NCBI RefSeq assembly: GCF_006345805.1
Contig: NC_043000.1
Location: forward strand, 60,574,001 to 60,638,000
Origin: Octopus sinensis
Lineage: Eukaryota
Direction of reading: 5' to 3'
Length of the DNA stretch: 64,000 bases
Positions 34,091 to 58,899 of this stretch are shown piece after piece. The notes under the pieces were generated by a model. The model was not told the origin of the DNA. It made no database searches and worked only from the letters and a program-made list of their open reading frames with translations. Position numbers and translations under genes: made by a program. Position 1 is the first letter of the stretch. Every line of letters begins with the position of its first letter.

Positions 34091-34097
34091 TATAAAT
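34091..34097 (+). promoter_or_regulatory. TATA box candidate for the secreted-protein gene
   Basis: TATAAAT 130 nt upstream of the ATG at 34221, in non-repetitive sequence; would place a TSS near 34120. Confidence 0.5.
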
Positions 34098-34220
34098 TTG
34101 AACTTACACCTCTCATCTATCATATAACTACTCAAACATTTTTCATTGGAGTAGTTTGTAATTTGCTGAGGAGCTAAATTGGCATCGTACTACAGCTGCA
34201 CCACTCTTATTTTGGACAAC

Positions 34221-34229
34221 ATGTTGAAA
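34221..34229 (+). CDS. uncharacterised secreted precursor, coding exon 1 (MLK)
   Basis: ggacaac ATG TTG AAA / gtaagtaa: good start context, consensus donor, phase 0 matching the 39317 exon and completing a signal peptide. Confidence 0.7.
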
Positions 34230-34385
34230 GTAAGTAATATATTATTCACATTTAACGAACTCTACAGTATACACACACACACATGCACGCACACATGTAC
34301 ATATGTATATATGTATGTATATATACATGTATATATGCATATATAATATATATGTATTTATATATGTATATGTACTGTATATATA

Positions 34386-35440
34386 TGAGGGGTGTTCATT
34401 AAAAACTTCCCCTGATCTACTTCCCAAGGACTGAGATGAACAAAACTTGACATAATTATTTATCCTTCTCTATATAAATAACACACTTCTCCCATCGCTT
34501 TATGCAGCTGTGAAGAACTTGTCTGTAGAAGTCAGTAGGTTGCATGTACTTTACCATAAAAATAAGTTCATCATCGTCTGAAAAGAGCTTCTCTTTCAAA
34601 AAAGGCTTCATCGTTGGAAAGATGATGCGAGGTCAGGAGAGTAAGGGGGATGAGGAATGATTTCATGGCTGCAGGAGTGTGCTTTCATCTGGGCAACATG
34701 CATATTGTGAACTGGGGGAATTGTCTTGGAGGAGGCAGACTCTTTTGGTCAGCATGCCACGCCTCTCTGCTTTGATGGTGTCCTACAATTTCTGCAACAG
34801 AGAAGCATAATATGCCCTGTTAACTGCAGTGCCTTTTGCCAGAAAATCCATCATCCCTACTCCACGCTGGTTCCAAAATACTGCGAGCATCACCTTGCCT
34901 GCTGAGGGTTGGACACAAGCCTTCTTTGGAGGTAGTGAGTTATCATGCTTCCATTGCTTTGACTGGATTTTAGTCTCAAGATCATAGTGATGGACTCATG
35001 TTTCATCCTGTGTGATAAGTCTGCTGAAAAAGTCCTCCTCATTTTCTTGGCACATTGCCAAAAGAGTCTGGGAGCAGGTGACTCATTCCTACTTCTGAAA
35101 AGGTATGAGTATCCAGGGAATCCATCATGCAGACAACTTCCGCATGTGCAAATGGTCGCAAATGATTTTTTTTTCCATGGATTTTTCATTTATCTTCACT
35201 TCTTGGGCTAGTTGGCAAAGATTTTAAGGATGGTGTCTTCATCAATGGTGGAATGTGATCGTCAGGAATAGGAGCAGTTCCCACTGATGTCCATCCACAT
35301 TTGAATTGGCAATGCCAGTGCTTGACTACGTTGTATGATGATGCATTGTCACCATAAACTTCTTTCATCTCATCGAAAGTCTCTTTTGGTGTATTACCTT
35401 TCAAGTATAAGAAACTGATCTGCATTCAACTGCCTCTAGG
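34386..35440 (-). mobile_element. defective mariner (irritans-like), 5' end lost
   Basis: TA|TGAGGGGTGTTCATTAAAAAC terminus; transposase pieces ISFLYLKGNTPKETFDEMKEVYGD, DETxVHHYDPETK, frameshifted. Confidence 0.8.
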
Positions 35441-35449
35441 TTTTATATT

Positions 35450-36325
35450 TTGAAAGTTTCTCCATTTCTTTTAGAGAATCGTTGTCATCTGCTGGTATTG
35501 GTACATCAATTAGAAAGCATTTTCTTTTTTTTCATGATCTCTGACAGCTATATCTGGCCTATTTGCCTTAATTTTTCTATCTGTGTATATTGGCATATCC
35601 CAGAGTATGGTTGCTTTCTCGTTTTCTGTGACCTTTTCTGGTGTGTGCTTATACCATATTTTTTCTGCTGTTATTCTATAGTGTTGACATAGCTTCCAGT
35701 GTATGTAGGTTCCAACACTGTCGTGTCTGTGAATATATTAGCCAGGACTGGGCAGGCAGAGATAATATGATTTATCGTTTCTTGTCCATCTCCACATATT
35801 CTGCAGTTACTTGTTATGTTTCTTTTCATGATATGTTTTTGGTAATTTCTGGTGGGGAGGCTTTGGTCTTGTGCTGCAATTAAAAATCCTTCAGTCTCTG
35901 ATTTGAGTCCTGAGCTTCTCAACCTTTGCTCGAATTTTTCTCTGTCTATTTCTTTTGCATTTAGTTTAGCCCAGTATTTGCCATGAAGGGGCTTTTCTTG
36001 CTATCATTTTATCATGGTCCATTGCTGTTCTAGTTTTAGTTTGGATTTCATTTGTTTTATAGCTTTCGTTGTTTCTTCTTCTTCATATTTGTTAGGTCGT
36101 ATGATTTCTTGTCAGCTTCCTTAAATACTGAGAACAGTTTTTTGTTTTGCTCATGTTTTGTGGCTATTTGTATTAGTTTTCCTTGCTTCTGAAGTAGGTA
36201 TTTTTGCAGTCCTATAGTAGTTATTTTATTATAGTTTTCCAGCTGTATAAGGCCTCTACCACCTTCAATACGTTGTATATATAGCCCTTCTATGTCAGAT
36301 TTTGGGTGGTGCATCCTAGCAAAGA
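35450..36325 (-). mobile_element. R4/Dong-clade LINE fragment
   Basis: HPKSDIEGLYIQRIEGGRGL, LKSETEGFLIAAQDQSLPTRNY, CRICGDGQETINHIISACP (CCHC). Confidence 0.85.
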
Positions 36326-36499
36326 CAAACGTTTTTGCTAATAAAGACTATGCTGTCTGAAAAGTAGTCATGGTTACTTTGCAAAAGAGAGCAATCATTC
36401 AGTATACTTAATGTAAACTATGGATGCACAAGATATGCAGTGGGATCACAGGTAGGTCTACAGAAAAGGCCTTCAGATGTAAATGATAACATTTATCTT

Positions 36500-36780
36500 A
36501 GGTTTACTTTAAGACATCTTGATTCGAGGCTTTGAAAGTTTAGAATTTGTTCATTAATTCTTTGACCGATTCAGCTATGAGAGCTAGACCATAGGCATGC
36601 AGAAGTTCCTATGGATGGCCAGTCTTAAATTTCTCTTTTATGGCCTGCAGAATATATAGTAAATAGCATGGCACTGAGAATCAAGTTCCAGATGGACTCT
36701 TACTTATTCATTTTCTCACTGAAATAATTGCTGACAGCATTTCCTTACATACCTTACATAACTCTCACAATCCATTCAGT
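36500..36780 (-). mobile_element. RTE RT fragment (decayed)
   Basis: Minus strand ILQAIKEKFKTGHP*ELLHAYGLALIAES..CLKVNL, parallel to the 24.5-kb RTE. Confidence 0.6.
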
Positions 36781-37299
36781 TACACCAGATTTTCATTTGC
36801 AACCACCAGACTGGCAAAGTCTTAGGTGTAAGATTATTGGCTTTAGTAGCTTGTTCTTTCTACAAAAAACTTCTGCACTTGTCTCACTAGGAAGACAGCT
36901 TTGGTGGTAAAGTGTTTTGACATAAACCAAACCTGAACTACATCACTTTTAAGCTAATTTCTTCCTTATTAGTTGTACTATATCACTTTTGAGTTACTTT
37001 TATAACTAGGTTAATCACTTTGATGTCTCTAGTTTCTTCTATCTAGATCATCTTCTTTGCTTTCATAGCAGTTGATTCTGTTATGCCAGAAATTAGAATT
37101 GATATCTTCTTGTTGGCTATTTGGTTAACTATATGAATGACCATGTATAACCTACTTTGCTGGAAATTTTCTGTACTACAATGACTATGACTGGTGGTCT
37201 GACCGTTTTCTTGGTCAACATAACCTTAACCATCATTGCAACCATGTAGCAATCAAAAGCTAGTCATCTGTTGAATCTATTTGGGGTAGATCTATTTGG

Positions 37300-38000
37300 A
37301 GTAGTCCCTCTTTCATCCATGTGCATTTTCCTCAATCAGCAACCAATTTAATAAAATTTCCACATCTATTCTCTGCATTGGTGAGAGCAAGTCCACCTTT
37401 ATCAATATGTACACATTTTCCATCAATGATGTTATGATTCCTATACACTACTTTGCAATCTGAAACATATCATCCCTCTACAGTTTATTCTTAAAGAAAA
37501 ATTATACATATCTTGTTGTAACGTAATATCTTATCCCTTGATCTTTTGGCTTGATTTGACCATATTGAGCTGATTAACTCAATTATCCAAATTCTTGCCA
37601 TTAGCTCCTTAGAATTATTTCCACTGTTTTTTTTTTATTATGCAATCTACAGGATCGGAGGATCAGTTAGACTGCACTTTGTTGACAATGTTAAACAGAC
37701 CTAAACATATGTCCATAATTGTCCCATGTCTGCAAAGTTTGAAATGTCCTTTCCCTCAGCATGTAAACTGGGGTGCAAAGATGCAAGAGAAGGGTGTGTT
37801 GCTCCTAGGACAAGTGTGAAGAGGTGTAATGAGCCTGAAATTTCCATTGGCTCATCATGCCTGTCGGAGTTCCAAAAATGTCTTTGTCCATGGAGACTGA
37901 GAACTCTTGCTCCACCCCTGCTGGGGTGCACATGGTTGGGATGTCTTTGATCATAGATTATCTCGCTTTGGATTGACTTGGAGCTAAACAACAACTACAA
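37300..38000 (-). mobile_element. decayed LINE ORF1-like (SGNH esterase-like) fragment
   Basis: HNIIDGKCVHIDKGGLALTNAENRCGNFIKL resembles the DGLHL..G...NFI end of esterase ORF1; weak. Confidence 0.3.
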
Positions 38001-38376
38001 GAAATGATCATGAACATTAGTCAGAATCATGAGTAGTTCATGTTGGTGAGCAGATGCTAAGCTGTAAATCAGTGACTCTGGACCTTTTATCATTACTACC
38101 CAGTTTGCCAAATCAGTTCTAAAAACACAACTCATAAAAAAATATCTTCAATTTTTTATGTTTTACTAGTCTTAGTCATTGGACTTTAATCATAATGGGG
38201 CACCACTTTCAAGGGATTAGTCAAATAAATCAACCCAAGTACTTTTTTTAAGCTTGATACTTTCTCTATTAGTCTCTTTTTGCTGAACTGTTAAGTTCCA
38301 GGTATGTAAACAAACTGATACTGGTTGTCAAGTAATATTGAGGGACAAACACAAAGACACACATGTTGATACATAC

Positions 38377-38435
<59 letters not shown>

Positions 38436-38622
38436 CATCATCATCATCATCGTTTAACATCCGCTTTCCATGCTAGCATGGGTTGGACGATTTGACTGAG
38501 GTCTGGTGAACCAGATGGCTGCACCAGACTCCAATCTGATCTGGCAGAGTTTCTACAGCTAGATGCCCTTCCTAACGCCAACCACTCCGAGAGCTTAGTG
38601 GGTGCTTTTACGTGTCACCAGC

Positions 38623-38686
<64 letters not shown>

Positions 38687-39316
38687 TATGTATATATACA
38701 CACTTGATGGTCTTTCAATTTCCATCGACCAAATCCACTCACAAAGCTTTGGCTGGACCAGGGTTATTGGTAGAAGACACTTGTCCAAGGGGCCATGCAG
38801 TGGGACTGAACCTAGAGTCATGTGGCTAGGAAGCAAACTCCTTACCACACAGCCAGATTTAAATTTTTTTAAAATTTAAATTTAAAACAAGTTAATAAAT
38901 TCACATTTGATGCTTTCCTTGCAGAAATATTCCTCGGTTTTTGTTGGAAATAAATATTATTCTGCATTCCTTATGCCTATGGTTTATTATTTGACATATT
39001 CACAAATATTTTAGAACTCAAATATTTCAAATGTAAATGAATTATTTTGTCATGACCTTTTCAAAATTTAAACCATGTTCCAAGCTTAGGAACCACTGCT
39101 TAAAGTGAACTGAATCCACTAACAAATACTGATACCCCACTGAAGTATATTAAAATTTTAAGATATTTAAAAATATGATAAAGCAAATGGTTTTGAAAAA
39201 AGGCATAAAGCGTATTCAATCCTAATCATATTTTCCATATATTTATGTAACCTTTTTTAGAAAGAAGTAATTAATACCGAGTAATTCTTTGTTTCTTTTT
39301 GACATCTAATTTCTAG

Positions 39317-39570
39317 ATCAACATTTGCATTTTGGTGATAGTCTTCAGCATGCTAGTTAACCATATAACCATGACCACAGATATTTTTGTAAAGAAGGAA
39401 TATGAAGAAAAGAGGTCATTTATTATGGATAGATATCCAAATTTGTTCTACACAGAAAAGCAGTTAAGTGATATTTTTGAGAAGGAATGGATCCAGAATC
39501 AATATCATTATCCTGTTTTTAAAAGAGAACGAAGAAGTTTGCATTTAGATGAGGAATTTTGTTGCCCAAT
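39317..39570 (+). CDS. uncharacterised secreted precursor, coding exon 2 (signal peptide, pro-region, furin site, CCP)
   Basis: tttctag / INICILVIVFSMLVNHITMTTDIFVKKEYEEKRSF...YHYPVFKRERRSLHLDEEFCCP + AT / gtaagt; 254 nt open exon with consensus splice sites; non-repetitive. Confidence 0.8.
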
Positions 39571-40462
39571 GTAAGTATTCATTTATTACTAATGTTACAA
39601 AGAGGGCAGTGGACAGGCAGAAATAATAGAGCGCTAGATGAAATATATTGGGGATGCCAGTTACGAGAATTTCAATCCTTCATAATTGGACCCAGCATTC
39701 ATTTCAGTCTGGTTACTTCTTTTATCAATCTTTAGTTATGGAACCAGTAACTTATGGAACATAAAGAATAATGTATACACACAAACACACACACACCACA
39801 TACACCACACACACACACACATATACACACCACACACACACATACGCATACCACACACACACACACACACACACAGAGTTTCTGCATACCAAATTTCACT
39901 TAAAAGGTGTTAGTCAAATTGGAGGTTGCAAAAAAAATATTTGTTGAAGGTGGTGCGCAGTAAGATCAAACCTAGAACCATGTGATTAAGAAGCTAGTTT
40001 CTTTACCGCACAACAATGCTTAAGCCTGAATATGTATATATATATATTTCTTAACTACATGGTTTCGGGTTCAGTCCCACTGTGTGGCACTTTGGGTAGG
40101 TGTCTTCCGCTATAGCCCCGATTCGACCAAAGCTTTGTGATTGAATTCGGTAGGTGGAAGTTACTGCCGTGTGTGTATGTGTGCGTATAGCTGCTCAGTG
40201 CCTCTCCGAAAGAGAGAGAGGGAATATTATATATATAAAACCTGGATGCATACATATACAAGTACACACACGCATATATATATATATAGAGAGAGTATAA
40301 AAGGGATAAATCATCCTGATGGATACTGTATTATCTCACAAATTGGTATATGCCAGCTATCCACAATGGTCTAATAACATAGTACTCAAGCTTAAAAGAA
40401 ATACTGGTATTGGTATGCTTCACTCATTGGGTAGTTCTGTGTTCCTATTCAGAACTCTCTTA

Positions 40463-40845
40463 CTTGTTTCAGTCATTTGACTGTGGCCATGCAGGAGCAC
40501 CGCCTTTAGTCGAGCTAATCGACCCCACGACTTATTCTTTGTAAGTCTAGTACTTATTCTATTGGTCTCTTTTGCTGAATTGCTAAGTTATGGGGGACGT
40601 AAACACACCAGCATTGGTTGTCAAGCGATGTTGAGGGGGAAAACACAGACACACACACACACACAGATACATATATATAGATACACGACGAGCTTCTTTC
40701 AGTTTCTGTCTACTAAATCCACTCACAAGGCTTTGGTTGGCTCACAGCTATAGTAGAAGACACTTGCCCAAGGTGCCATGCAGTGGGACTGAATCTGGAA
40801 CCATGTGGTTTGTAAGCAAGCTACTTACCACACAGCCACTCCTAT
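40463..40845 (-). mobile_element. SINE family A, full-length
   Basis: Reverse complement of the family A consensus. Confidence 0.9.
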
Positions 40846-41249
40846 GCCTATACATTCTGTAGAGTATATAATTGATAATGAAGAGGAGAATGGAGATTTA
40901 TTCACATCCAAAACTTTTTTATTAATAAGTTTATGCAGTATATATAACAATGACCTACATGTTTCAACTGCAAATTGCTCCGTATGCAATTAAGCACCCT
41001 AGTTGCTGCAATTTCACAATATTTGCAAAATGAACTGATTCAAACAAGCATCCTGCATTGGTATTCAGTTGAAGGTGATAGCATTACTTTTTAAATCCAA
41101 TGGAATTTTTATCTTATAATCACCTCTACTAGTATTACAGTTGAAGTGTGATTTTAAAATGTTTATTCAGATTTCAGTTAATTGTAGTAGTTTTGTTTTC
41201 ATTTTGCTATATGCTCAATTATTATTATTATTATTGTTGTTGTTGTTGT

Positions 41250-41790
41250 TGTTGTTGTTAGTATTATTTGTATAAATATCATTAATTATTACAATCATTA
41301 TTGTAACTAGCATAGTTACTATAGATGGTAAGTTGTGTTTATTTAAATCATCTAAATGTTCCTGTCTAGTGTTTATATTAGTAAATTTAGAAGTGAAAAT
41401 TTGATACATTTCTTCCACACAAGGGTCATATCTAATATTATCTATTCTATAAAGTTTTGCCTTACTAATTATTTCTCAGGCAATCAAATATATTTTGTTA
41501 CTATCTTTTAGTGCTCAAATTAGTTTCCTAATTTGAGCACTAAAATTTTTTATCTATATTTAAATGAATTTAAATGACTGGCAATTCTTTGCTTCATGTT
41601 ACATGAGCTAGCTCTGATATAGAAGTATTTCCTATTCTTTGAGGTTATCTTACATCTATATACAATATTTTTATACCTACAATTAGAGTTAAGCAGACAG
41701 ATCCTGTCCCTTGTACAATTGCATTTTGATAGTTCTACAATTTCCATTAATATTTTCCACTTCAGCTTCTCTAGAGGTGATTTCTAAATT
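41250..41790 (-). mobile_element. Penelope-like element, GIY-YIG 3' fragment
   Basis: CNCTRDRICLLNSNCRYKNIVYRCKI..YFYIRASS..KQRIASHLNSF: Cys linker plus VY/YI(G) of the PLE endonuclease. Confidence 0.75.
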
Positions 41791-42999
41791 TTAATAAAAA
41801 AGTTTTGGAATTGAATAAATCTCCACTCTTTTCTTTGTTATCTATTATATAATGCATATATATACATACTCACATATATGTGTGTGTGTGTATATATATA
41901 CACACACACACACATATATATATGTATGTGTGTATGTTATATATACATACATATGCATGTATATATCTTTTATATGAATGTGAGTGGGGTTATGTATGTG
42001 TGTTTAGGCCCAAAAGGTTCTAAAACAGTGCATCCTCAAGAAAAATGAATTTGAATTTTGAAATCTGCATCTCAAAAACAATGTCAACCATAAATAATAG
42101 AAAAAATATAATTTACTCTGATAAATAGCTCAACTTTTAGATCGACAGCCCTCCTATTTTCTGTCTTATTATTGCTGTTATGCAAAAATCCTGTTTTCTG
42201 ATGAGGTAAAAATGATCAAACTTTATACCACTGTCACATTTTTAAAAAGTTTTCTTCAATAAATTAACAACAGACTTGGATTCAGTGCAAAAATGTACAT
42301 CAATATACCAAACTTGAAAATTTTCACTTGATTTTAAAATTTCAAAATCTGTGACAGAAACACATAAGATCACCCCACTCTCTTTCTATTTGTCTATCTC
42401 TTTTATTTTCTCCTGGTAAACTTTCTCACTCTCTATATAAGTATACTGCTCACACTGAGTAAGTGTGTGTGCTTGTCAGTATGTGTGTACGCAAATGTAA
42501 AAGAATTTCATTAGGGTGATAAATTGATTTTAAAAAAGGTATGTAAATAGCAACATATTTTAATAGCATAATTTTCTATTAGTAAATAATTTTTCTTACA
42601 CATACACACACACACACACACATACATGGATTCTGCTGATGCACGGTAAGGTTAAAGATTTAAATAACAACTTTTGTTGCCGTTGTTGCTTTCACTGTAT
42701 AAAATGTATATTGCTCACTGTGCGTGTATATGTGTTTGTCAGTGTGTGTCTATGCATAGGATTTAAAAAAGGTATGTAAAAGATAATTTATTTTGATAGC
42801 ATACATTTCTGTTGGTAGATATGTTTTTTCGTACACACACATACACACACGGACTCGCTTGATGTGGGATGGGGTTAAAAATTTAAATAGACTTTTTTTG
42901 TTGTTGCTTAAATCCCAGCACTTGCACAGTATCATCATTCCATAAAATGGGAAGAAAAATACTGAAAACCATCAATACATGTCAGAATGACAAACAAAC

Positions 43000-43720
43000 G
43001 AGGAAGGTTGCAGGTGGTCGTGGGATGCGCCAGAAACACCATCTGAATCTCCCTTAAATCACCTTTCCATTTGAAAATTGTTTTAAAATTATAAACAGAA
43101 ACAAATTCCAGATTCGGCCCGCCCAAATTTTAAAATTATGGTTAAAAAGTAATTTCGGAAAAAAAAAATGAAATTTTACGATTTATTTTTAATGAAAATT
43201 TTTTTAAAAACATTTCCCTATTGTTTTTAAATTTCGTTTCATTTTCTGTTTGAAAATAAAGGATGTAAGTTTTGTAATGGTGATTGCCGATTTCCAATTT
43301 GTTTTTAACCTTCAAGGTTTCTCCCTTCGTTTTAAGTGTGTAGTGCAAAAAAGAAAAGAAAAACATTGGCCAAAATTGGTACTGAGAAGGGGGAGTGGGG
43401 TTTGAACAAATTCATAAATTTTCAAAACTTTTTTTCTTTGTTTTTAAGTGCATAGTTGCAAAAGAAAAAAAAAATGACAAAATTGGTCCTAAATTGGGAG
43501 AGAGTGGTTTCAAAATTTTTCAGACATTTTTATAACAAAAAGCGTTTCCCCATCATTTACAAAGGTGTCGTGAAAAAAAGTTTGAAAATCCCCATCAAAA
43601 CGGAGAAAATCCAACTTACCTGGGTATGCTATTTCGAAAATCACCCAAGGGCTTTTGGAATAGCACACCCACAAAACAATATTGTAAAAATTACTCGGCA
43701 ACGACGGGATACTCAGCTAG
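43000..43720 (+). mobile_element. non-autonomous Helitron, 3' terminus
   Basis: Ends aCtCGGCAACGaCGGG..CAGCTAG|T, the same terminal pattern as 31841; left boundary uncertain. Confidence 0.65.
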
Positions 43721-46700
43721 TGTAAATGTGTGTGTGTGTGTGTGCACGCGCGTGTATATGTATATATGTGTGTCATATATATATAAATATATATCATGTC
43801 CCCTGATGCTCAGGACAACCTTGCCATTCTACTTTACGAGGTAGATAAAATAAACATCAGGCAAAAACACTGAGGCAGACGTAATTGATTAAAACTCCCT
43901 GAAAGAAGTGCTCCAACATGGTCGCTTTTCAGTGAGTGAAACCAGTTATAGAATATGGTATCTGAGGAAATCGACATCCTTCCCAACAAAATATCTGTAC
44001 GTAAGTCAATCAGTATAGTTATGCCTCATAAATGAAGAATATTTCATTGCAGTTTATTTTTAAAATGTTTTTAATTTGAGTTATTTTTCTTAGTTTTAGT
44101 TCTTTTAGTGTAAAGTAATTTCAAAATAAATTGTTTAATACGCGGTGAACAGGAAGAAACAAAACGATGTCTTGTATTTTCATAATAGATTCAGATTCAG
44201 ATGCAAATCGTTGTTGTTTCACCATCAGAGAATAACTTCTTTTAAGCGAATGTGTGTACATAACATATTCGATTCATTGACTTAAGGGGTCTCTGGGACA
44301 TCCTCTGTTTCGACATTGTGTCTTGTTGGTCAAAGGCACACCGGACTAATGAATCTAACTTCTGCAAACAAGTTATTTATTGGTGTATGCTGATATCTGC
44401 CACCCGATAGTAACTCGTTATTTCTATGGTGAACAAGAATAAAAAAACATCATTTAAAATTTCCGATTTACTGTTTTGTTTTAATGTTGGGTGTGGATTT
44501 AATGTGCGACTCTCTCTCCAACACTGAGTGAAAATGTTGGACGGAGAATGAAAGATTACTATATTTAATATTTTTAGTGCTACAATTATATTAAGATTAA
44601 TTAAGTTAATCAAAATGATTTTTATTTAAAATATTTATTCCTCTTAGATACTATCATTTCGCTATACTTTGTGTTATTGCATATACCATAATGGTATACT
44701 ACATTTTTGTTTGGATAAGACCGTGAGAAAAGAATACATTATCTTTGCAAGACCTGAAGTTATTGGCGTAAAGGGAGGGAAAAAGACATAGGTTGATGCA
44801 GTAGGAAGCAACTATTTAAGATATTGAAGTATCCTTAGAAAGGGAGATCCAATCTGAACACCAGTAACAGGGGATTTTGCCGAAAGCAGCCAAGGGTCAG
44901 ATGCTGATGTTAAACTGAAAGACGAACTAGGGCTACCACCCAAGAATAAATGCAGTCTAATGGCTTTCAGCCAGTTTCTATCTACCCAGTTTAATTTTCA
45001 TGGGTAGGGGTGAGGTTGAGAAAGAAGCTATTTGCCCAAGGTGCTGCGCAGTGAAATCGAACATGGAAATAAATGATTGTGAAGCGAACTTCATAACTTC
45101 AAAACCACGTAGGAATTACTAAAGGCACATGAACCACCAAACGTTTGACTGGGATGTCAAGAAGGGGCAGTACATTTGGCAGGGGTCTTAACAATTCCAT
45201 TTCAGTGCAGCTCCTTAGTCATTGGCTCCCATATGACACCCACTTCTCATCTGTTGCTCCACAAACTATCTGCATGTGACAGTGTGCCACCTGAGCAACA
45301 GTATTGACAGGCCAGCTAAACCGAGTAGTAGAGAGAGCTGACAAGTTTTTAAACTTACGTTGAATTTCTGTAAGATCTTGTCGCTCTAAACACAAAGAAT
45401 GAATTTCTGACGGACTGTGCAGAGGAACCCAGCTGTCAATTTTAACAAACAGAAAGATGATATCCAACAATATCGTTATGAGACATGTACCTCAGAGCAC
45501 GGAGAGTCATGTGGATTCACCTTCCTCACCCCACTGCGTCTCTGGTATACCTCGAGTGATTTGGCCCACTGATTTAGAAAGTGATTTAGGAGAGTGGGCA
45601 TCCAGTGCACCCTTCTCACAATATAATCAAAACTTAGAGCAAGTGAAGATTCGAACTTCTTCAACTCATTTACAGACGGCGAATCTTTGCAAACGTAGAA
45701 TTATCACATGTGACTACAACAATGAAATACCGACTCTTGGAAGGTACTGTAAAAGCAGGAGTGACGAGAAAGCTGCTTATTAATTTGTTGGAAGTTACTA
45801 ATTTTTACTAAAAGAAAGCATTTATTAATGATTCCATTGTCTAGAAAATTCCTAAAAAATCCAATTTCATTTTATCAAAAAAAAAAAAAAAATCATAATT
45901 CACTGCAAGCGTTTTGTAAATTCTTAAACAGTGAGACACCATTTATTAATGTCCTGCTGCTTTCCACCTTTTCTTTGTTTTTATATATCCGATAGTTAAT
46001 TCATTGCTGAAACCTCCAAAGTTTGTGCTATCGTGGTTCATCTGATGAACGGAAATAAAAAAAAAAATATCATTTCCCATCTCTATACACCTGTACTTGT
46101 GTATTTATATAAGTTATTAATATTAAATATATCAATATTAATATTAAATATATGTCAACGGAAAAGGGATAAGTTAAGCAATCATATGTGTTCGAATCAA
46201 CAATGTGTTTTTCAATGTAATATTTTTCCAGTACATTCTTTAATCTCTTTATCATGCCTCTAAAAGCACTTTGAACATTAGAGATTCTGTGTCTGAAGTA
46301 TTTTTGAATAAAACATTTTTGTTTTTAATAACAAACTGGTGATCGAAATATACTTTATACAAGACAAAATATATTAATACACATACGCTTTAAATGCAGT
46401 ATATTTTGATCCTTTCACCCGCACGATTTTCACTAAGAGAAGAAAAAAAAACTCCGATTTTTTGCGTGGAATCAAGTACCCTGACCTCCTATTATATTGC
46501 AAACCCCTTATTTTTGATTGGAAAAGGGATGGGGGGGGGACCGGACCCCCATATCCCAGAATCATTGGAATTTATTTTTTTTTGCTGAATGAATTGAGGT
46601 GACCTCCTAATATGCTACAAAACCCTTTTGGGGTCCGGGAAACGGGGTAGGGTGAAGTGGAAGCCTCGGAAATTTCACCCCCACCCCCATTGATCTTTTC

Positions 46701-46759
46701 ACCTGCACGATTTTCACCAAGAAAAAAAAACTCGGATTTTTTGCATGGAATCAAGTACC

Positions 46760-47040
46760 CTGACTTGGTATGGCCAATGCCAGTGCCGGAGGCACGTAAA
46801 AAGCACCATTCAAGCATGATCGATGCCAGTGCCATCTGACTGGTCCCCGTGCTGGTGACACTTGAAAAGCACCCACTACACTCTCAGAGTGGTTGGTGTC
46901 AGGAAGGGCATCCAGCTGTAGAAACCTTGCCAGAACAGACTGGAGCCTGACTGCTGCCTCCTGGCTTCCCAGTCCTCAGTCAAACCGTCCAACCCATGCC
47001 AGCATGGAAAGCAGACGTTAAACGATGATGATGATGATAT
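46760..47040 (+). mobile_element. family C element, tail-to-tail with the CR1/L2-group LINE
   Basis: ..AACCCATGCCAGCATGGAAAGCAGACGTTAAAC(GAT)n directly abuts the (TTGA)n tail of the LINE. Confidence 0.85.
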
Positions 47041-47051
47041 ATAATGATATA

Positions 47052-49318
47052 TGATTGATTGATTGATTCTAGTTTCAGCTCATGAGCTGTGGCCATGCTG
47101 GGGCACCGCCATTTGGTGTTGCTACTTGGTTTTACTTCACGAAAGCTTTTTAGCAACTGCCATTTGGTGCATGAGAGAGTTCGATGCAGCTGCCCTCATC
47201 TGCACCTCCTGCCGTGAAGTTGGTTCATCTGGGACACCTGACAGGAAGAGTTCCATTTTAAAGACATCTGCATCCACCCCATGCAGGTCTCTCAGGTTCT
47301 TCGGGAGGATATTGAAGAGCTGTGGGCCACGGAAGCCCAGGCTATCACAGTATCTTGTCCTACATCTTGATGGCAAATTTGGAGTCCTAGGCACCACGCA
47401 GTGGCGCCCAGTTCTGGCATTTGTGTAACTCTCGATGCCAAAGTTTGGGACACGTCCCTCCAGGATCTTCCAGATGTATATTATGGCATATCTTTCCCGC
47501 CTACGCTCCAAGGAATATAGTTTTAATCTCTTGAGTCTTTCCCAGTAGCTTACATTCTGCATAGAGGCTATCTTCTTCGTGTAGCTACGCTGGATCGCCT
47601 CGAGCTCTGTGATCAACTTGACACTGGATGGTGACCATAACTGAGAGCAATAGTCAAAGTGGCTTAGGACAAGTGTCCTCCAGAGGACCATCATGGTTTC
47701 TTGTTCTCTTGTTCTAAAGGTTCTGAGAATCCAGCCAGCCAGCCGTCTACATTTTATTGCCAGTTTAGCAACATGTACATGAAAGGTCGCGTCATCACTC
47801 ATGTGAATACCCAGGTCACGCACTGATTGTGCCTCTGGGATTGCAATCCCTCCGGGTCCAGTGTATTCATTGGGTGTTGCATTCAGTTTTGCATGCTGAT
47901 AGTATAAAGCTTGAAACTTTTCAGCATTGAACTGCATGCTATTCTTTTCAGCCCACTTGTATATTTCGTCCAGCTCACATTGCAGGTGCTTAGTGTCTTC
48001 AGGGTTCTGTATTGCCTGTGAAACTTTTGTATCATCTGCATAACTTGTGATCGTGGCTCTCTGCGTGGCTGAGGGCATGTCTGAGAGGGCCATTATGAAC
48101 AGTAGTGGTCCCAAAACAGTGCCCTGCGGAACACCGCTCACTATTTGTGTGTTAATGGAAGTGGCCCCATTGGCTGCTACCACCTGACTTCTATTCTTCA
48201 GAAAGTCATGAAGCCATTCTCCCAATTTTCCAACTATGCCAAGATCACGCAGTTTGTGACATATCATTCCATGATCGACTTTATCAAAGGCCTTTGCAAA
48301 GTCGAGATATATGACTTCCACATTTGAGTGGTTGAGCAGTTGTTTCAGCACCCAGTCATAGTGTTGTAGGAGCTGAGTTAAACAGCTTCTTCCTGGTCGG
48401 AAACCATGTTGGGTGTCAGGCAGCAAGTCATTTTCTTCAAGGAAGGTGATTAGTTTCCTTCTGACTATTCGTTCCATGACCTTGCTGATGTGTGAGGTGA
48501 GAGAGACAGGTCTGTAGTTCTTGGCCTCTGCTCTGCTACCACCTTTATGAATAGGGCATATTTTACCTTCCTTCAGTTTTTTTGGAAGTTTGCCAGCTGC
48601 AAGGAAGCTCTGAAAGAGGATCTGCAGTGGTCTTGCTAGGACTCTCTTACATACTTTTAGGAGGATTGCCGGGAATCCATCGGGGCCAATAGCTGATTCT
48701 GTTTTCATTTCATCTATGACCTTTATTACATCGTCTTCCTTTATATCGATGTAATTTATCGTCGCCGCCTCTGATTTTATATCTGCAGTGGTAAAGAAGT
48801 CAGTTGGATTGGTGATTTAGAAATGCCCGAGGGGTGGAGTGAAAACACTCTTGAATTGCTCATTCAGTATTTCACTTACCCTCATTGGTTTTCCTGTGAG
48901 TGTGCCATCCTTTTCAAGGAGTGGCCCTATCCTACAGTGTACCGTAGCTGTTTCTTTGGCATACCTGTAGAAAGCTCTGGGGTTAGATTTTATGTTGTCT
49001 ATAGCCCAGGCTTCTTTGTCTGCTCTTTCCTTTTCATGGGAGAGTTGCAGACATTTTTCAATTTCCAACAGTTTTATTTTCAGGCGGGACTTTTCACTGC
49101 TTTCAATCTGTTTGTTTAGGCGATTTGAAATTTTTGTACGCCGCCTCATTAAGATTTTCCTCTCTCTGGGGATTTTGTTCTTGTGTACAGTGGCCTTTCT
49201 CTCTGGGACACATTTGTAGCATATGGCTTGCGTTACAGACATGAATTGTTGAAGTTTCACGTCGATGTCTGGCGAGGAGAGACATTTAGGCCAGTTTTGT
49301 TTGAGGATCTCTTTCTCA
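47052..49318 (-). mobile_element. young 5'-truncated CR1/L2-group LINE (ORF2 RT intact apart from one stop)
   Basis: ORFs 48817-49389 and 47137-48708 are in frame, separated by a single TAA and 36 sense codons. GPDG, NYRPVSLTS, QHGFRPGRSCLTQL, LDFAKAFD, SGVPQGTVLGP, YADD, SLERRR. (AATC)n tail; 5' end at a (TA)n tract. Confidence 0.93.
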
Positions 49319-49616
49319 ATATATATATATATATATATATAATTATGATTTATTGTTACACCATTCAAAGTATAGGTAAACTTCGTCACCTACTCACACT
49401 CCCCCCTCTCTCTCTCTCCACACAAAAATGAAGCTCATTTCGGCGCCAAAACTTGCAAAGGAAAAATGCTTTAGTTTTTCAGATCTTTTCTGCAATCTGG
49501 GATTATTATATATATATTATATCCAGTGATTTTAAGAGGTAGGAAAAAGATATTTTACTTTAATATTATACTTTTACTTTGTTTCACACATACATGCAAA
49601 AACTTTAACGTGCTTT

Positions 49617-50038
49617 GGATCTTTTCGGTTTGAACGGCAGTTTTTAACATAATTTCTAGGTAACTAAAATATTCTAAACTTCGTATACTGGTAGAATATA
49701 CTTATAAAATATCTTTTTCTCTTGGCTTTATTGAGAAAATTATATAGTTTGTAAGATATTTGGTCTTTAATTTCTTGCATTTCGGCAATTTCAACCAATC
49801 AATGACCGTCTATTGAGGTGAAAATATTCTGTGCCGTATGAATATGTCCCTCGTTTAAGAAACAGATTGGGTTTATTTACATTTGTGACGAAAAAAAGAT
49901 ACCCTTCCCCCACCCCTAACACTAACCCTAACTCTAAAACAGATTGAAATGCAATAGATCGATACTAGGGTCATAATTATGGGTGACAATTTCATATGAC
50001 ACCGCTAGAAAAAACTGCCGTTCAAACCGAAAAGATCC
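49617..50038. mobile_element. MITE with GG termini and 8-bp TSD (Merlin-like)
   Basis: TIR GGATCTTTTCGGTTTGAACGGCAGTTTT / AAAACTGCCGTTCAAACCGAAAAGATCC; TSD CGTGCTTT at 49609-49616 and 50039-50046. Confidence 0.9.
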
Positions 50039-50239
50039 CGTGCTTTTTCTTAGATGAATTTATCGTTCGTTATCTCACCACACACTTCGTTACCACTAAC
50101 TTCTATAACCTCTACATTTTCACTTATTCATTTCAAACTTCTTTGAATTTTCAATCTAATGTAATCCACAGTCTCTGGAAAACGTATTTCTGCAAAATGT
50201 TATCTAAAATTATCGGTAAAGAAAGAAATAGTAAAAACA

Positions 50240-50380
50240 TTATTTACATTCGACGGATATTTGTACTCATCTTATTTGTTGTTAACACGTTTCGGCTGAT
50301 ATACCCTTCATCAGGTGTCTTGGGAAAATTTCGAACCTGGGTTCTCATTCCTAAGGTATTCTTCGTTGTTGTTGTCGGAG
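50240..50380 (-). mobile_element. partial copy of the Penelope-tailed element at 4300-4810
   Basis: Shares CCAGGTTCGAAATTTtCCCAAGACACCTGATGAAG..TATATCAGCCGAAAC..TTAACAACAAA.AAGATGAG. Confidence 0.8.
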
Positions 50381-50837
50381 CTAAACACACATACATAACC
50401 ACATACACTCCCATTTATATAGCGTGTATGTATATATCTATATACATCTGTGTATACACACACACAAATTTTTCCGGAATCACTGTATCCGAAAAGGTTG
50501 TCTTTTGGACAAAAAAAAATTTTTAAGCAATAATTTGCGAGAAAATGGCGGGTGGGGACGGGAGGAATCTTTCCTATTTTTTGAATGTTTAACTTTTACG
50601 AAACCTCCTTATTTTAACCGTTTAATGCACTAGCTTTCCCGATTGAAATATGAAAAAGAACCTAATGTGTGAAATGAGATGTAATAAAAGAAAATGTAAT
50701 TGTTTAAAGTCTCATCTTTCTTGGTTTTGACGAAAAGTCACTGATCTTGAAAAAGTGGAAATAATAAATCTCTGATCGAGGTATAAACAATAGCTGCACG
50801 ACATCGTGAAGTATACTTGCCACCTAAATGTGGCTAA

Positions 50838-51234
50838 CCCTTAAGGGTTGATGCTTCTGTAGCTTGTAGCCCCAGGAAGACATCTCCTCCAGCTGGCTAT
50901 TGACACACTTTCTGTGCCCTATCAGTATTTGCAAAGGGAAGTCATCGTTCCCATCTCCAGCCTGACATAATACACACGGACCCGAGTTTCCGAGTATTAA
51001 AAGGATATATATATTTGCTTTGAGAACTACTTCCCATCGCCAACCGGTGGTTGTCACACACTGATGACGGGTCAATACCCAGAAACTCGGGTCTGTGTGT
51101 ATCACGTCAAGCTGGAGATGGGAAGGATGACTTCCCTTTGCAAATACTGATAGGGCACAGAAAGTGTGTCAATAGCCAGCTGGAAGAGATGTCTTCCTGG
51201 GGCTACAAGCTACAGTAGCATCAACCTTTAAGGG
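50838..51234. mobile_element. fold-back MITE, about 160-bp arms, TTAA-bounded
   Basis: 50838-50999 is reverse-complementary to 51073-51234; CCC-TTAA-GGG.. / ..CCT-TTAA-GGG termini. Confidence 0.9.
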
Positions 51235-52539
51235 TCACACTTTAAAGAAATGGCAAAGCGAGAGAGAGAGAGAGGAGAACAGAGAGGAAGTAAGAGAGAA
51301 AGAGACAGTGAGTGGTGACGGCGTTCGTTTTATGTTTTTAAATGTTTATCACATCGCAAGAGAAGTAAACACATAGATACAAATACACATTGTTAAATCA
51401 AAAGCGGGAGAGAAGAGGGACACAAAAGAAGTGAAAGAGAAAGAGAAAGTGAGAGAAAGATAGAGCCAAAGAAAAGCTCATACTTAGATACATAGACACA
51501 GCAAATATTGGATGTCTATTTCACTTTTCATTACCAAAAGAGGATAAAATCAACTCAGAAATGGCTGGAGTTCTCCACAGACATGCATAACATTAATGTA
51601 GTTCTCAGGGCGATTCAGCCCCACACAAAATATGACAAAGCTGGCCCCTTTAAATTACAGCTAAAACTCTACACACACACGCGCGCGCGCGCGCGCGCAC
51701 ACACACACACACGCACACACGCACACACATAAATGTATTTGTGTGTGTGTGTGTGTAAAGTTTAGGTTAGTTAAAACATGTTTGCAATAACAAGTGTCGC
51801 GTGGTGGAAGCCACCGTCAAATGACTGAAACAAGTAAAAGAATAAAAGAATACCAGAAAAACGGTCCGAATCCACTTAAGCAAGAAGGTTCTTTGAATAT
51901 GTACGATGTATTTTAAGGTTAAATAGTAATTCCGTTTACGTTTGTGTAACTGAGATATTTTGGTTGGATTATATAGTCATTGGTGTTACATTACTTTCTA
52001 TATTCTGTAACTGTCACAATATACTTTTCTAGGCCTGAAATTTTTGTGGGGAGTGGGGGGTGGGCAGTTGATTAGAACGACCCCAGTACATAACTGGTAC
52101 TTAATTTATCGACCTCGAAAGGAAGAAAGGCAAAGTCGACCTCGGCAGAATTTGAACTCAGAACGTAAAGAACGTAAAGACAGACGGTCATTATATACGA
52201 ACATTTCTCATGGCACCAGTACACTGTTTATAGATGCTTACATTTTAAAAATTTTCCGTGAATTTTTCACGGGTCCTGCTAGTAGTAGTAGTAGTAGTAG
52301 TAGTGAATAAAGATTCAGATAGAATCGGGTGCTTGAAAAGATATGTACCAGATAGGGTTCGATAAACTTGTGGTCAGCACCTATGATTGATAAATATGAA
52401 ATATGATTTTCCGGTTCTGTACACAAAGAAAACCAATCTATGAGTATTTAGCGCCTAAGGGCTGGTTCAAAGCAACGTTAATTATTCGTTGTTGGTATAC
52501 TCCAGAGTGTCTGACGTGTCGTAGATCTCTATGGTGTAT

Positions 52540-52911
52540 TATAATCAAATGAATAATAATAGACGATGAATAATTGTCAGCTTATTACAGTTGTTTCTTA
52601 TGCATTTTTAAAAATAGATGAACGAGAACATTACTTCGTTGCCAAAAAACCGTAATCATCAGATGAAACATAATTTCAAAAACAAAAGAAGTCTGTCGAG
52701 GCTTACCATGGAAATGGTAAGCCTCGACAAACTTCAACGACGTCCCTGCTGCATTCTCGGGATATTCATTTGTTTTTGAAATTGTTTCATCTCATGGTTA
52801 CAGTTTTTTGCAATGAAGTAATGTTCCCGTTCTTCTATTTAAAAATGCGTAAGAAACAGCTGTAATGAACTGACAATTATTCATCGTCTGTTGTTATTCA
52901 TTTGATTTATA
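52540..52911. mobile_element. fold-back MITE-like element, about 145-bp arms, internal perfect hairpin
   Basis: 52540-52686 is reverse-complementary to 52769-52911; 16-bp perfect stem 52694-52709 / 52714-52729. Confidence 0.85.
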
Positions 52912-53528: not shown

Positions 53529-53603
<75 letters not shown>

Positions 53604-54066: not shown

Positions 54067-54390
<324 letters not shown>

Positions 54391-54448
54391 TTTATTTCAA
54401 TTAGTTTATTTATCTGTGTATTTATTATGTTTTCAGGATCCTCTATCG

Positions 54449-56779: not shown

Positions 56780-56829
<50 letters not shown>

Positions 56830-58897: not shown

Positions 58898-58899
58898 GT

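What the first reader, a model, noticed from the sequence alone, without database searches (positions are those of the whole stretch)
34091..39570. Unannotated secreted proprotein gene: 9-nt first coding exon, signal peptide, furin site and CCP motif
Seen: TATAAAT (34091), ATG TTG AAA/gtaagt (34221-34229), a 5,087-nt intron and a 254-nt exon give MLKINICILVIVFSMLVNHITMTTDIFVKKEYEEKRSFIMDRYPNLFYTEKQLSDIFEKEWIQNQYHYPVFKRERR|SLHLDEEFCCP(I/M). The ORF track shows only a fragment. Known: signal peptide, pro-domain, RxRR and an early Cys is the layout of cystine-knot ligands (neurotrophin, Spaetzle, PTTH/Trunk, TGF-beta). Inference: a processed growth-factor, neurotrophin-like or Toll-ligand precursor, plausibly lineage-specific. 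The mature domain lies in exons I could not find, so the family is unproven.
Basis: partly seen in the sequence, partly recalled or inferred. Interest (0 to 1): 0.8.

Follow-up and report, generated by a model that had tools for sequence, protein, structure and literature searches.

The report
Octopus Spaetzle-like secreted proprotein gene start
The flagged stretch is the real 5' end (a 9-base first coding exon plus a 254-base second exon) of an already annotated but uncharacterised Octopus sinensis gene for a small secreted, furin-cleaved, seven-cysteine protein that most resembles Spaetzle, the insect Toll-receptor ligand. Its cysteine-rich part is encoded about 70 kb further on, outside the window.

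Summary
ATG TTG AAA|gtaagt lies at 34221-34229, a 5,087-nt intron follows, and the 254-nt exon 39317-39570 ends ...CCP-AT|gtaagt.

Window 33221-64000 is 100% identical to Octopus sinensis chromosome CM016862.1. The NCBI gene LOC115210415 (XP_029634877.1, 168 aa, "uncharacterized protein") starts its CDS exactly at window 34221. The gene is therefore not unannotated.

Orthologues in O. vulgaris and O. bimaculoides have the same MLK|INxCIL junction. The junction codon is ATA (Ile). Two further exons lie about 70 kb downstream, roughly 46 kb past the window end.

These give a 92-aa product after RERR76|S77 with 7 conserved cysteines and 2 N-glycosylation sequons.

The only Pfam hit is Spaetzle (PF16077), and it is sub-threshold: E 0.007-0.044, 15-17 bits against a cut-off of 27. 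Measured from the cleavage site, the register R|xxxxDExFxC and Cys10/Cys47 match Drosophila Spaetzle C106 exactly. Part of the prodomain aligns too.

Pairwise and profile statistics are weak (p about 0.01-0.05). AlphaFold models are poor. dN/dS is about 1.

The Toll-ligand or neurotrophin-like reading is probable but unproven. This is an ordinary new member of a known kind.

The parts
34091..34097 (+). TATA-like motif about 130 nt upstream of the start codon (candidate core promoter)
   Evidence: Present and conserved in O. vulgaris and O. bimaculoides within a roughly 290-nt block of about 94% identity. The motif itself occurs at chance frequency in the window, 33 found against 30 expected. 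Promoter function is inferred, not shown.
34221..34229 (+). Coding exon 1: ATG TTG AAA (Met-Leu-Lys), donor GTAAGT at 34230
   Evidence: unique 11-mer. The CDS start of O. sinensis LOC115210415 maps here. MLK is the N-terminus in P0001, P0002, P0004 and P0005. Codon 2 differs synonymously in O. bimaculoides.
34230..39316 (+). Intron 1 (5,087 nt, phase 0), filled with transposon debris
   Evidence: GT...AG boundaries. A mariner HTH_48 fragment lies at 35186-35425 on the minus strand. RT-like ORF fragments and SINE-like copies are also present. The region is collinear with O. vulgaris and O. bimaculoides.
39317..39570 (+). Coding exon 2 (254 nt), residues 4-87 plus two bases of codon 88. It encodes the rest of the signal peptide, the prodomain, the furin site and the first 10 residues of the mature part, including Cys85-Cys86.
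   Evidence: tblastn of P0004 matches residues 4-88 at 98.8%; the only mismatch is the junction codon read through as Met.
39317..39376 (+). Remainder of the predicted signal peptide (residues 4-23; with exon 1 this gives MLK-INICILVIVFSMLV-NHITMT)
   Evidence: Read from the sequence: one basic residue, a 14-residue uncharged hydrophobic core and a polar c-region. Orthologues have T-M-A|T, a typical -3/-1 pattern. No signal-peptide predictor was available, so this is inferred.
39524..39535 (+). Codons for R73-E74-R75-R76, a furin-type R-X-R-R site; predicted cleavage before S77 (39536)
   Evidence: It is conserved as R-G-R-R in O. bimaculoides. It sits 9 residues before the first aligned knot cysteine, the same distance as the SPE/Easter site in Drosophila Spaetzle.
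39560..39565 (+). Codons for Cys85-Cys86 (mature positions 9 and 10)
   Evidence: Invariant in all isoforms and species. Cys86 aligns with Cys10 of Spaetzle C106.
39571..64000 (+). First 24.4 kb of intron 2 (phase 2; about 70.5 kb in all). It runs off the window. The alternative 5' exon and coding exons 3 and 4 lie beyond 64000.
   Evidence: The GTAAGT donor is at 39571. No match to residues 89-168 exists in the window. In the same-species locus L003, exon 3 is at 76806-76919, the CDS ends at 78050, and the alternative 5' exon is at 62091-62369. Window-equivalent positions are obtained by adding 33220.

Best explanation
The region holds the promoter-proximal part and the first two coding exons of Octopus sinensis LOC115210415. 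This four-coding-exon gene spans about 77 kb and encodes a 168-aa secreted proprotein.

Proposed mechanism:
1. The signal peptide (residues 1 to about 23) directs the protein into the secretory pathway.
2. A short prodomain follows, about 53 aa long and containing a conserved YPxLF...L..IF.K motif.
3. A furin-type convertase cuts at R-E-R-R76|S77.
4. This releases a 92-aa, N-glycosylated, seven-cysteine domain. Six cysteines are proposed to form an NGF/Spaetzle-type cystine knot. The seventh (Cys85, next to knot Cys I) is proposed to make or stabilise a dimer.
5. The dimer acts as an extracellular ligand, most likely for a Toll-family receptor. It would be processed during secretion, like Drosophila Spz2 and Spz5 (the 'neurotrophin' Spaetzles), rather than by an extracellular clip-protease cascade.

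Shown:
- exon structure
- identity with the annotated gene
- conservation of frame, splice sites, RxRR site and all cysteines in three species

Inferred:
- signal-peptide cleavage
- furin cleavage
- knot fold
- dimerisation
- receptor
For: Gene identity:
- Window 33221-64000 is 100% identical to L003, and the CDS start is at window 34221.
- P0004 is identical to the window translation over residues 1-87.

Full-length models in three species share one architecture:
- GT-AG at every junction.
- A stop followed by AATAAA about 190 nt after the O. vulgaris CDS.
- All 7 Cys invariant, together with NRT and NxT sequons.

Spaetzle link:
- PF16077 is the only Pfam hit for the mature part, P0002, P0004 and P0006. 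P0005 also has a weaker BRCA-2_helical hit at E 0.093. PF16077 E-values are 0.007-0.044, and the match covers up to model positions 17-94 of 96.
- UniRef already names the O. bimaculoides isoform X1 'Spaetzle domain-containing protein'.
- MAFFT against Drosophila Spz C106 needs no gap from the cleavage site to Cys47. It aligns R|xxxxD5-E6-x-F8-x-C10, QxI..xC47, PxC, and F..P..CxC.
- The optimal local alignment is collinear from the prodomain YPxL motif to the last Cys.
- Shuffle tests give z = 3.1-3.2, p about 0.012.
- The Foldseek top list is dominated by coagulogen, NT-4, NGF, NT-3, BDNF/NT-3 and Aedes Spz1C.

Literature:
- Spz precursors are a prodomain plus a C-terminal cystine knot. Spz2 and Spz5 are cleaved by furin-like proteases during secretion (PMC9427763).
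- O. vulgaris haemocytes express TLR homologues, MyD88, IRAK and TRAF6 (PMC4199593).
Against: - The Spaetzle profile scores are below Pfam's gathering cut-off (15-17 bits against 27).
- hhalign against Drosophila Spz gives P = 0.05 and probability about 1%.
- phmmer against PDB sequences finds no cystine-knot protein.
- Both AlphaFold models are low confidence, with pLDDT 43.5 and 50.2.
- The second model had Spz in its alignment, so the non-significant Foldseek ranking (best E 0.6, TM below 0.4) is partly circular.
- The cysteine that forms the central intermolecular disulfide in Spz, the extra Cys of C-C-x-C, is absent. Octopus has Y-C-T-C.
- The loop between knot Cys III and Cys IV is only 2 residues (C-P-E-C), against 13 in Spz.
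- dN/dS is about 1.0-1.4 between O. vulgaris or O. sinensis and O. bimaculoides, from 7 synonymous and 30 non-synonymous differences. This gives no sign of purifying selection.
- No relatives outside the genus Octopus were found. The exhaustive search used only residues 1-88, and the three word-indexed searches are of limited sensitivity.
- No transcript, expression or peptide data could be examined.
Confidence: 0.6

Rival explanations
1. It is a cystine-knot ligand of the NGF/Spaetzle/coagulogen superfamily, but works as a neurotrophin-like or other growth factor through a non-Toll receptor (a Trk-, p75- or Kek-like receptor). It would not be a Toll ligand.
For: - Intracellular furin-type activation and a C-terminal CxC without the Spz CCxC are neurotrophin-like traits.
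- Foldseek ranks neurotrophins level with Spz and coagulogen.
- Furin-cleaved Drosophila Spz2 and Spz5 act as neurotrophins (PMC9427763).
Against: - No Pfam NGF hit appears even at E <= 10, whereas Spaetzle is hit in every orthologue and isoform.
- The exact register with Spz C106 from the cleavage site and the prodomain similarity point to Spz specifically.
Confidence: 0.15
2. It is a fast-evolving, Octopus-restricted secreted cysteine-rich protein. Its resemblance to Spaetzle is coincidental and comes from cysteine spacing and composition. The function would be something else, for example an antimicrobial, reproductive, salivary or pheromone-like peptide.
For: - All family statistics are sub-threshold.
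- dN/dS is about 1 or higher.
- No homologues were detected outside Octopus.
- The structure models are unconvincing.
Against: - The similarity is collinear over about 120-125 residues, including non-cysteine positions (DExF, QxI, F..P) and the cleavage-site register.
- Spaetzle is the sole hit among 24,736 Pfam families for the mature part, P0002, P0004 and P0006, and the best hit for P0005.
Confidence: 0.18
3. The gene product is the 88-aa protein of the old O. bimaculoides model (A0A0L8FP53, ending CCPM-stop). The intron-2 donor is not used, and furin releases a 12-residue peptide SLHLDEEFCCPM, a small neuropeptide- or toxin-like product.
For: - P0001 ends exactly at ATG TAA, which overlaps the GTAAGT donor. 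That stop is conserved in all three species.
- An unspliced or alternatively polyadenylated transcript cannot be excluded without reads.
Against: - Newer NCBI and O. vulgaris models in three species all splice on to exons 3 and 4.
- No AATAAA or ATTAAA is seen where a short transcript would need one, within about 1.3 kb after the stop. That stretch runs straight into a CA microsatellite and SINE-like repeats.
- The donor is a perfect GTAAGT.
- The alternative 5' exon ends at the same phase with the same ...CC-x-(2 nt)|GTAAGT design, which only makes sense if both exons join exon 3.
Confidence: 0.04
4. It is a decaying or non-functional gene, or an annotation artefact, with no functional product.
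For: - dN/dS is about 1.
- One intron is very long (about 70 kb).
- The product is annotated 'hypothetical' or 'uncharacterized'.
Against: - The reading frame, all eight splice signals, the start codon, the RxRR site, 7 of 7 cysteines and both glycosylation sequons are intact in three species.
- Exon nucleotide identity (about 92.5%) and promoter and 5'UTR identity (about 94%) are at or above neighbouring non-coding DNA at 84-91%.
- A 9-nt coding exon is unlikely to be predicted without transcript evidence. This last point is inference.
Confidence: 0.03

Closest known systems
Spaetzle family (Pfam PF16077), especially furin-processed Drosophila Spz2/DNT1 and Spz5/DNT2
   Same: - Layout: signal peptide, prodomain, a basic cleavage site 9 residues before knot Cys I, then a C-terminal domain of about 90-105 aa with 7 Cys.
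- The D-E-x-F-x-C start, Cys10 and Cys47 are in the same register as Spz C106.
- The ending is F..P..CxC.
- The prodomain YPxL...L..xF.K motif aligns with short Drosophila Spz isoforms.
- Furin-type processing matches Spz2 and Spz5 (PMC9427763).
- Prodomain-variant isoforms from one gene are also seen for Drosophila spz (names of P0007 and P0008).
   Different: - Profile score is below the Pfam cut-off.
- The prodomain is much shorter, about 53 aa.
- The loop between Cys III and Cys IV is 12 residues shorter.
- The seventh Cys sits next to Cys I (CC at the N-terminus) instead of in the C-terminal CCxC that makes the central inter-chain disulfide.
- It is a lophotrochozoan protein, so far seen in Octopus only.
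- The receptor is unknown.
Vertebrate-type neurotrophins (NGF, BDNF, NT-3, NT-4; Pfam NGF PF00243)
   Same: - A secreted proprotein cleaved at an RxRR furin site.
- Six knot cysteines with a C-terminal CxC.
- A small mature domain that forms a dimer.
- These structures are among the top, non-significant, Foldseek matches.
   Different: - No NGF profile hit at E <= 10.
- There is an odd, seventh cysteine.
- Loop lengths differ, and the prodomain is much shorter.
Horseshoe-crab coagulogen
   Same: It belongs to the same NGF/Spz-type cystine-knot superfamily and is activated by proteolysis. It is the top-ranked Foldseek match (1aoc_A), at E 0.6.
   Different: The match is not significant and the model is low confidence. 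Coagulogen has many more disulfides and a clotting function, and there is no sequence-profile hit.

Membership tests
Spaetzle (PF16077) Toll-ligand family | Significant match to the family profile (Pfam gathering score 27 bits) | tested here: inconclusive
   Scores are 14.8-17.4 bits and E 0.007-0.044, for the mature domain, P0002, P0004, P0005 and P0006. This is below the cut-off. It is the only family returned at E <= 10 for all of these except P0005, which also has a BRCA-2_helical hit at E 0.093. UniRef names P0006 'Spaetzle domain-containing protein'.
Spaetzle (PF16077) Toll-ligand family | Precursor layout: signal peptide, prodomain, and a proteolytic activation site immediately N-terminal of the cystine-knot domain | tested here: met
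   The sequence has a hydrophobic N-terminus, a prodomain of about 53 aa and R-E-R-R76|S77. The first aligned knot Cys is at mature position 10 in both octopus and Drosophila C106. Cleavage itself is inferred.
Spaetzle (PF16077) Toll-ligand family | Six knot cysteines in Spz/NGF order and spacing (Cys I ... II-x6/7-III ... IV ... V-x-VI) | tested here: met
   Mature Cys positions 10, 47, 53, 56, 87 and 89 correspond to Spz C106 positions 10, 47, 54, 68, 99 and 101, with one 12-residue deletion between III and IV. All are invariant in three species. Disulfide connectivity was not determined.
Spaetzle (PF16077) Toll-ligand family | A seventh cysteine in the C-terminal C-C-x-C that forms the central intermolecular disulfide of the dimer | tested here: not met
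   Octopus has Y-C-T-C. Its seventh Cys is at mature position 9, next to Cys I. PMC9427763 states that the central inter-chain disulfide is conserved between Aedes Spz1C and Drosophila Spz. Assigning it to the extra Cys of the C-C-x-C is my own recollection, not checked here. A covalent dimer through Cys9 is possible but untested.
Spaetzle (PF16077) Toll-ligand family | Cystine-knot fold with long beta-hairpins | tested here: inconclusive
   AlphaFold pLDDT is 43.5 with a 3-sequence alignment and 50.2 with 5 sequences including Spz. The second model is beta-rich in the mature part. Foldseek top hits are coagulogen, neurotrophins and Spz1C, but with E >= 0.6 and TM <= 0.40.
Spaetzle (PF16077) Toll-ligand family | Binds and activates a Toll-family receptor | not testable with these tools
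   There is only background support: TLR homologues, MyD88, IRAK and TRAF6 are expressed in O. vulgaris haemocytes (PMC4199593).
Neurotrophin (NGF, PF00243) | Match to the NGF family profile | tested here: not met
   No NGF hit at E <= 10 for any of the five sequences, and no neurotrophin in the phmmer search against PDB sequences.
TGF-beta superfamily | A long prodomain (about 200 aa or more) and a C-x-G-x-C ring motif in a mature domain of 7-9 Cys | tested here: not met
   The prodomain is about 53 aa. There is no CxGxC (the motif present is C-P-E-C) and no Pfam TGF_beta hit.
Short amidated or cyclic neuropeptide precursor (88-aa model A0A0L8FP53) | The transcript ends after exon 2, so the dibasic-flanked short peptide is the end product | tested here: not met
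   Current models in three species splice to exons 3 and 4. No poly(A) signal follows the in-frame stop. Read-level evidence was not available.

The most novel reading that the evidence does not exclude
One octopus gene makes two differently activated forms of a fast-evolving Spaetzle/neurotrophin-like ligand by choosing between two duplicated 5' exon cassettes about 56 kb apart. Each cassette supplies its own signal peptide, prodomain, activation region and the Cys-Cys pair.

The cassette in this window carries a conserved furin site, so its product would be secreted already mature, in 'neurotrophin mode'. The distal cassette lacks a conserved furin site (...EYEKKSCCQV in O. bimaculoides, ...PKGNNYCCQV in O. 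vulgaris and O. sinensis). Its product would be secreted latent, needing extracellular activation or none, in 'immune Spaetzle mode'.

dN/dS of 1 or more would then reflect adaptive evolution of an immune or neural cytokine in cephalopods.
Probability: 0.2. Interest if true: 0.55.

Novelty: new member of a known kind. Interest (0 to 1): 0.3.

Why it matters
Toll receptors are well documented in molluscs, but their endogenous ligands are poorly defined. The O. vulgaris haemocyte transcriptome paper that catalogues TLR, MyD88, IRAK and TRAF6 does not mention Spaetzle at all.

A credible octopus Spaetzle-like gene gives a concrete candidate to test. The question is whether cephalopod Tolls are cytokine-activated, as in insects, or bind microbial patterns directly, as in vertebrates. 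A second question is whether such ligands have neurotrophic roles in a large-brained invertebrate.

For the scan itself, this is a useful positive control. A 9-nt coding exon and a proprotein layout inferred from raw sequence proved exactly right.

The gene model already exists in public annotation, and the family link is only suggestive. The result is therefore incremental, not surprising.

Tried and rejected
1. Downstream exons in the window. A scan of every AG acceptor in the correct phase after 39570 for Cys-containing ORFs found nothing credible. tblastn with the full-length orthologue then showed that residues 89-168 are not encoded in the window.

2. Exact-sequence look-ups. P0001 and the in-exon Met-start ORF are not on record.

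3. The 88-aa product. P0001 at first suggested that the protein ends at CCPM, giving a 12-mer peptide. I rejected this as a truncated old model that reads through the donor, where ATG|TAA overlaps AT|GTAAGT.

4. P0003. This 598-aa tandem-repeat protein matched profile positions 19-46 in nine repeats at E 6e-5. I treated it as a repeat-inflated chance match and did not pursue it.

5. The insulin A-chain idea (KR...EECC). I rejected it because there are no B-chain cysteines upstream.

6. TGF-beta, IL-17 and NGF. No profile hits were found.

7. A text search for DEEFCCP found 0 papers. Literature searches for an octopus or cephalopod Spaetzle found no paper describing one.

8. A word-indexed search with a merged octopus plus Drosophila Spz alignment retrieved only the octopus proteins and Drosophila spz isoforms, with no intermediates.

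9. AlphaFold was run twice and Foldseek once. Confidence was too low to decide the fold.

10. The semi-global pairwise alignment was weaker than the local one, with z = 2.2.

Full report
**What is in the sequence.** The window is AT-rich (about 36% GC) and repeat-laden.
- TATAAAT at 34091-34097.
- ATG TTG AAA at 34221-34229, followed by GTAAGT.
- A 5,087-nt intron ending tttctAG at 39316.
- A 254-nt open exon at 39317-39570, ending TGT TGC CCA AT|GTAAGT.

The frame upstream of 39317 is closed by the TAG that overlaps the acceptor. The hydrophobic start INICILVIVFSMLV therefore needs an upstream ATG exon.

**Identity of the locus.** A protein search with the exon translation found one hit. It is the 88-aa O. 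bimaculoides model A0A0L8FP53, 85% identical, beginning MLK and ending CCPM.

An exhaustive HMMER search with a profile of these two sequences found a 168-aa protein, P0002. Its cluster holds two entries:
- O. vulgaris CAI9721673.1, "hypothetical predicted protein".
- O. sinensis XP_029634877.1, "uncharacterized protein LOC115210415" (P0004).

P0004 is identical to the window translation over residues 1-87. Fetching its locus (L003, GCA_006345805.1, CM016862.1:60,607,221-60,686,270) showed that window 33221-64000 is 100% identical to L003 1-30780. The annotated CDS starts at L003:1001, which is window 34221.

The window is therefore O. sinensis.

**Gene structure.** In O. sinensis (L003):

| Feature | L003 coordinates | Status |
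|---|---|---|
| Exon 1 (E1) | 1001-1009 | in window |
| Exon 2 (E2) | 6097-6350 | in window |
| Exon 3 (E3) | 76806-76919 | outside window |
| Exon 4 (E4) | ends at 78050 | outside window |

Intron 2 is about 70.5 kb, so E3 and E4 lie about 46 kb beyond the window end. tblastn finds no trace of residues 89-168 in the window.

O. vulgaris (L001) and O. bimaculoides (L002) have the same four exons with GT-AG boundaries. Spliced CDS translations reproduce P0002 and P0005 exactly.

The split codon is AT|A (Ile) in O. sinensis and O. vulgaris, and AT|G (Met) in O. bimaculoides. The old 88-aa model simply read through the donor, where ATG TAA overlaps AT|GTAAGT. There is no AATAAA or ATTAAA in the roughly 1.3 kb after that stop, only a CA microsatellite and SINE-like repeats. 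After the real stop in O. vulgaris, an AATAAA follows about 190 nt later.

**Support for the 9-nt exon.**
- ATGTTGAAAGT occurs once in 128 kb of two-strand sequence.
- Three species' models begin MLK.
- O. bimaculoides has the synonymous CTG at codon 2.
- The 290 nt from about -250 to +40 are about 94% identical between O. sinensis and O. bimaculoides, against 84-91% for nearby non-coding DNA.
- No ATG lies between the TATA-like motif and the start codon.
- The TATA motif alone is uninformative, at 33 found against 30 expected.

I could not inspect reads. The splice junctions rest on annotation pipelines and on conservation.

**The protein.** The 168 residues divide as follows:
- A signal-like N-terminus: K3, then a 14-residue hydrophobic core, then a polar NHITM(T/A) region.
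- A prodomain of about 53 aa.
- K72-R-E-R-R76|S77, which is R-G-R-R in O. bimaculoides.
- A 92-aa C-terminal part with Cys at 85, 86, 123, 129, 132, 163 and 165, and sequons N136-R-T and N146-(A/S)-T. All are invariant in the three species.

**Family.** Pfam returns Spaetzle (PF16077) as the best hit for every orthologue and isoform and for the isolated mature part. It is the only hit at E <= 10 except for P0005, which also has BRCA-2_helical at E 0.093. Scores are 14.8-17.4 bits (E 0.007-0.044) against a cut-off of 27. UniRef already calls the O. bimaculoides isoform X1 "Spaetzle domain-containing protein".

Aligned to Drosophila Spz C106, no gap is needed from the cleavage site to Cys47: S1-L-H-L-D5-E6-E-F8-C-C10 against V1-G-G-S-D5-E6-R-F8-L-C10. 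My recalled C106 sequence was confirmed by retrieving spz isoforms P0007 and P0008. Cys47 is equal in both.

After a 12-residue deletion, P-x-C, F..P and C-x-C also align. With full precursors the alignment extends into the prodomain: (D/R)YP(D/N)L...(K/Q)L..(N/I)F.K.

The statistics are modest:
- Local-alignment shuffles: z = 3.1-3.2, p about 0.012.
- Semi-global alignment: z = 2.2.
- hhalign: P = 0.05.
- phmmer against PDB: nothing relevant.

AlphaFold gave pLDDT 43.5 with 3 sequences and 50.2 with 5 sequences including Spz. The second model is beta-rich in the mature domain. Foldseek against PDB gave no significant match. Seven of the top eight hits were coagulogen, NT-4, NGF, NT-3, BDNF/NT-3 and Aedes Spz1C (E 0.6-1.9, TM <= 0.40). 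This is directionally consistent but partly circular.

**Differences from canonical Spaetzle.**
- The extra cysteine that makes the central inter-chain disulfide is absent. PMC9427763 states that this bond is conserved between Aedes and Drosophila Spz. Placing it at the C-terminal C-C-x-C of Spz is from my own memory and was not checked.
- Octopus instead has a vicinal Cys-Cys at the N-terminus.
- The III-IV loop is C-P-E-C.
- The prodomain is short.
- Activation is by a furin-type site. This is as reported for Spz2/NT1 and Spz5/NT2, not for Spz1, which is cut by SPE (PMC9427763).

**Evolution.** dN/dS between O. vulgaris and O. bimaculoides is about 1.07 overall:

| Region | dN/dS |
|---|---|
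| Signal peptide | 0.35 |
| Prodomain | 1.39 |
| Mature domain | 1.38 |

These values rest on 7 synonymous and 30 non-synonymous differences. The window's exons against O. bimaculoides give 1.01. Numbers are small. There is no evidence of purifying selection, yet frame, splice sites, cleavage site and every cysteine are kept. This fits a fast-evolving secreted ligand better than a pseudogene.

No homologue outside Octopus was found. However, the exhaustive search used only residues 1-88, and the other searches depend on shared 5-mers.

**Second 5' exon.** O. bimaculoides isoform X1 (P0006, 175 aa) replaces E1 and E2 with a single alternative exon. That exon encodes a different signal peptide and prodomain and ends ...KKSCCQ-GT|GTAAGT, in the same phase with the same Cys-Cys.

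The exon is intact in O. vulgaris (L001 64615-64893) and O. sinensis (L003 62091-62369), at 61% identity to O. bimaculoides. It lacks a conserved furin site. It lies outside the window.

**Conclusion.** The window holds only the promoter region, E1, intron 1, E2 and a third of intron 2 of an annotated, uncharacterised gene.

The best reading is a furin-processed Spaetzle-like cystine-knot ligand:
- Gene structure: confidence about 0.97.
- Spz/NGF-superfamily fold: about 0.6.
- Toll ligand: about 0.4.

O. vulgaris expresses TLR homologues and the MyD88/IRAK/TRAF6 chain (PMC4199593), so a receptor pathway exists. No paper found here describes a cephalopod Spaetzle.

This is a new member of a known kind, of modest interest.

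Noticed in passing
L003 62091-62369 (O. sinensis; window-equivalent about 95311-95589, outside the window); L001 64615-64893; L002 33696-33980: An alternative, paralogous 5' coding exon of the same gene. It encodes its own signal peptide and prodomain and ends ...CCQ-GT|GTAAGT in the same phase as exon 2. It is annotated as isoform X1 in O. bimaculoides only, but is an intact ORF in all three species. It has no conserved furin site.
   Followed up: partly
window 7847-9295 (+) and 12326-12676 (+): A 482-aa uninterrupted ORF matches N2,N2-dimethylguanosine tRNA methyltransferase (TRM, PF02005, E 1.7e-119). This is a TRMT1-like gene about 21 kb upstream of the Spaetzle-like gene on the same strand. 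The 116-aa ORF at 12326 may be its C-terminal exon, but has no Pfam hit.
   Followed up: partly
window 47137-48708 (-), 48817-49389 (-), 54449-55852 (-), 28728-29108 (-): Retroelement ORFs inside intron 2 and upstream. One is a 523-aa reverse transcriptase (RVT_1, E 1e-31), with an adjacent 190-aa ORF that has no Pfam hit. Another is a 467-aa ORF with a weak RT match and a Cys-rich C-terminus. A third is a short RT fragment.
   Followed up: partly
window 21928-22335 (+), 35186-35425 (-), 57609-58190 (-): DNA-transposon remnants. There are two Mos1/mariner HTH_48 fragments, one of them inside intron 1 of the gene. There is also a Pif1 2B-domain fragment, possibly Helitron-derived.
   Followed up: partly
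window 33279-33518, 38447-38581, 46893-47021, 32489-32821 and others: A recurrent SINE-like repeat whose translations read ...GRASSCRN...DWSLVQ... or ...FLQLDALPNANHSVS.... It is scattered on both strands and often flanked by (TA)n, (CA)n or (CATA)n microsatellites.
   Followed up: no
P0003 (598 aa): A tandem-repeat protein of unknown origin matched the prodomain part of the profile (positions 19-46) in nine repeats, at E 6e-5 (repeat...NENYLSRKEFFMNRYQMFEFL...). This is probably a repeat-inflated chance match.
   Followed up: no
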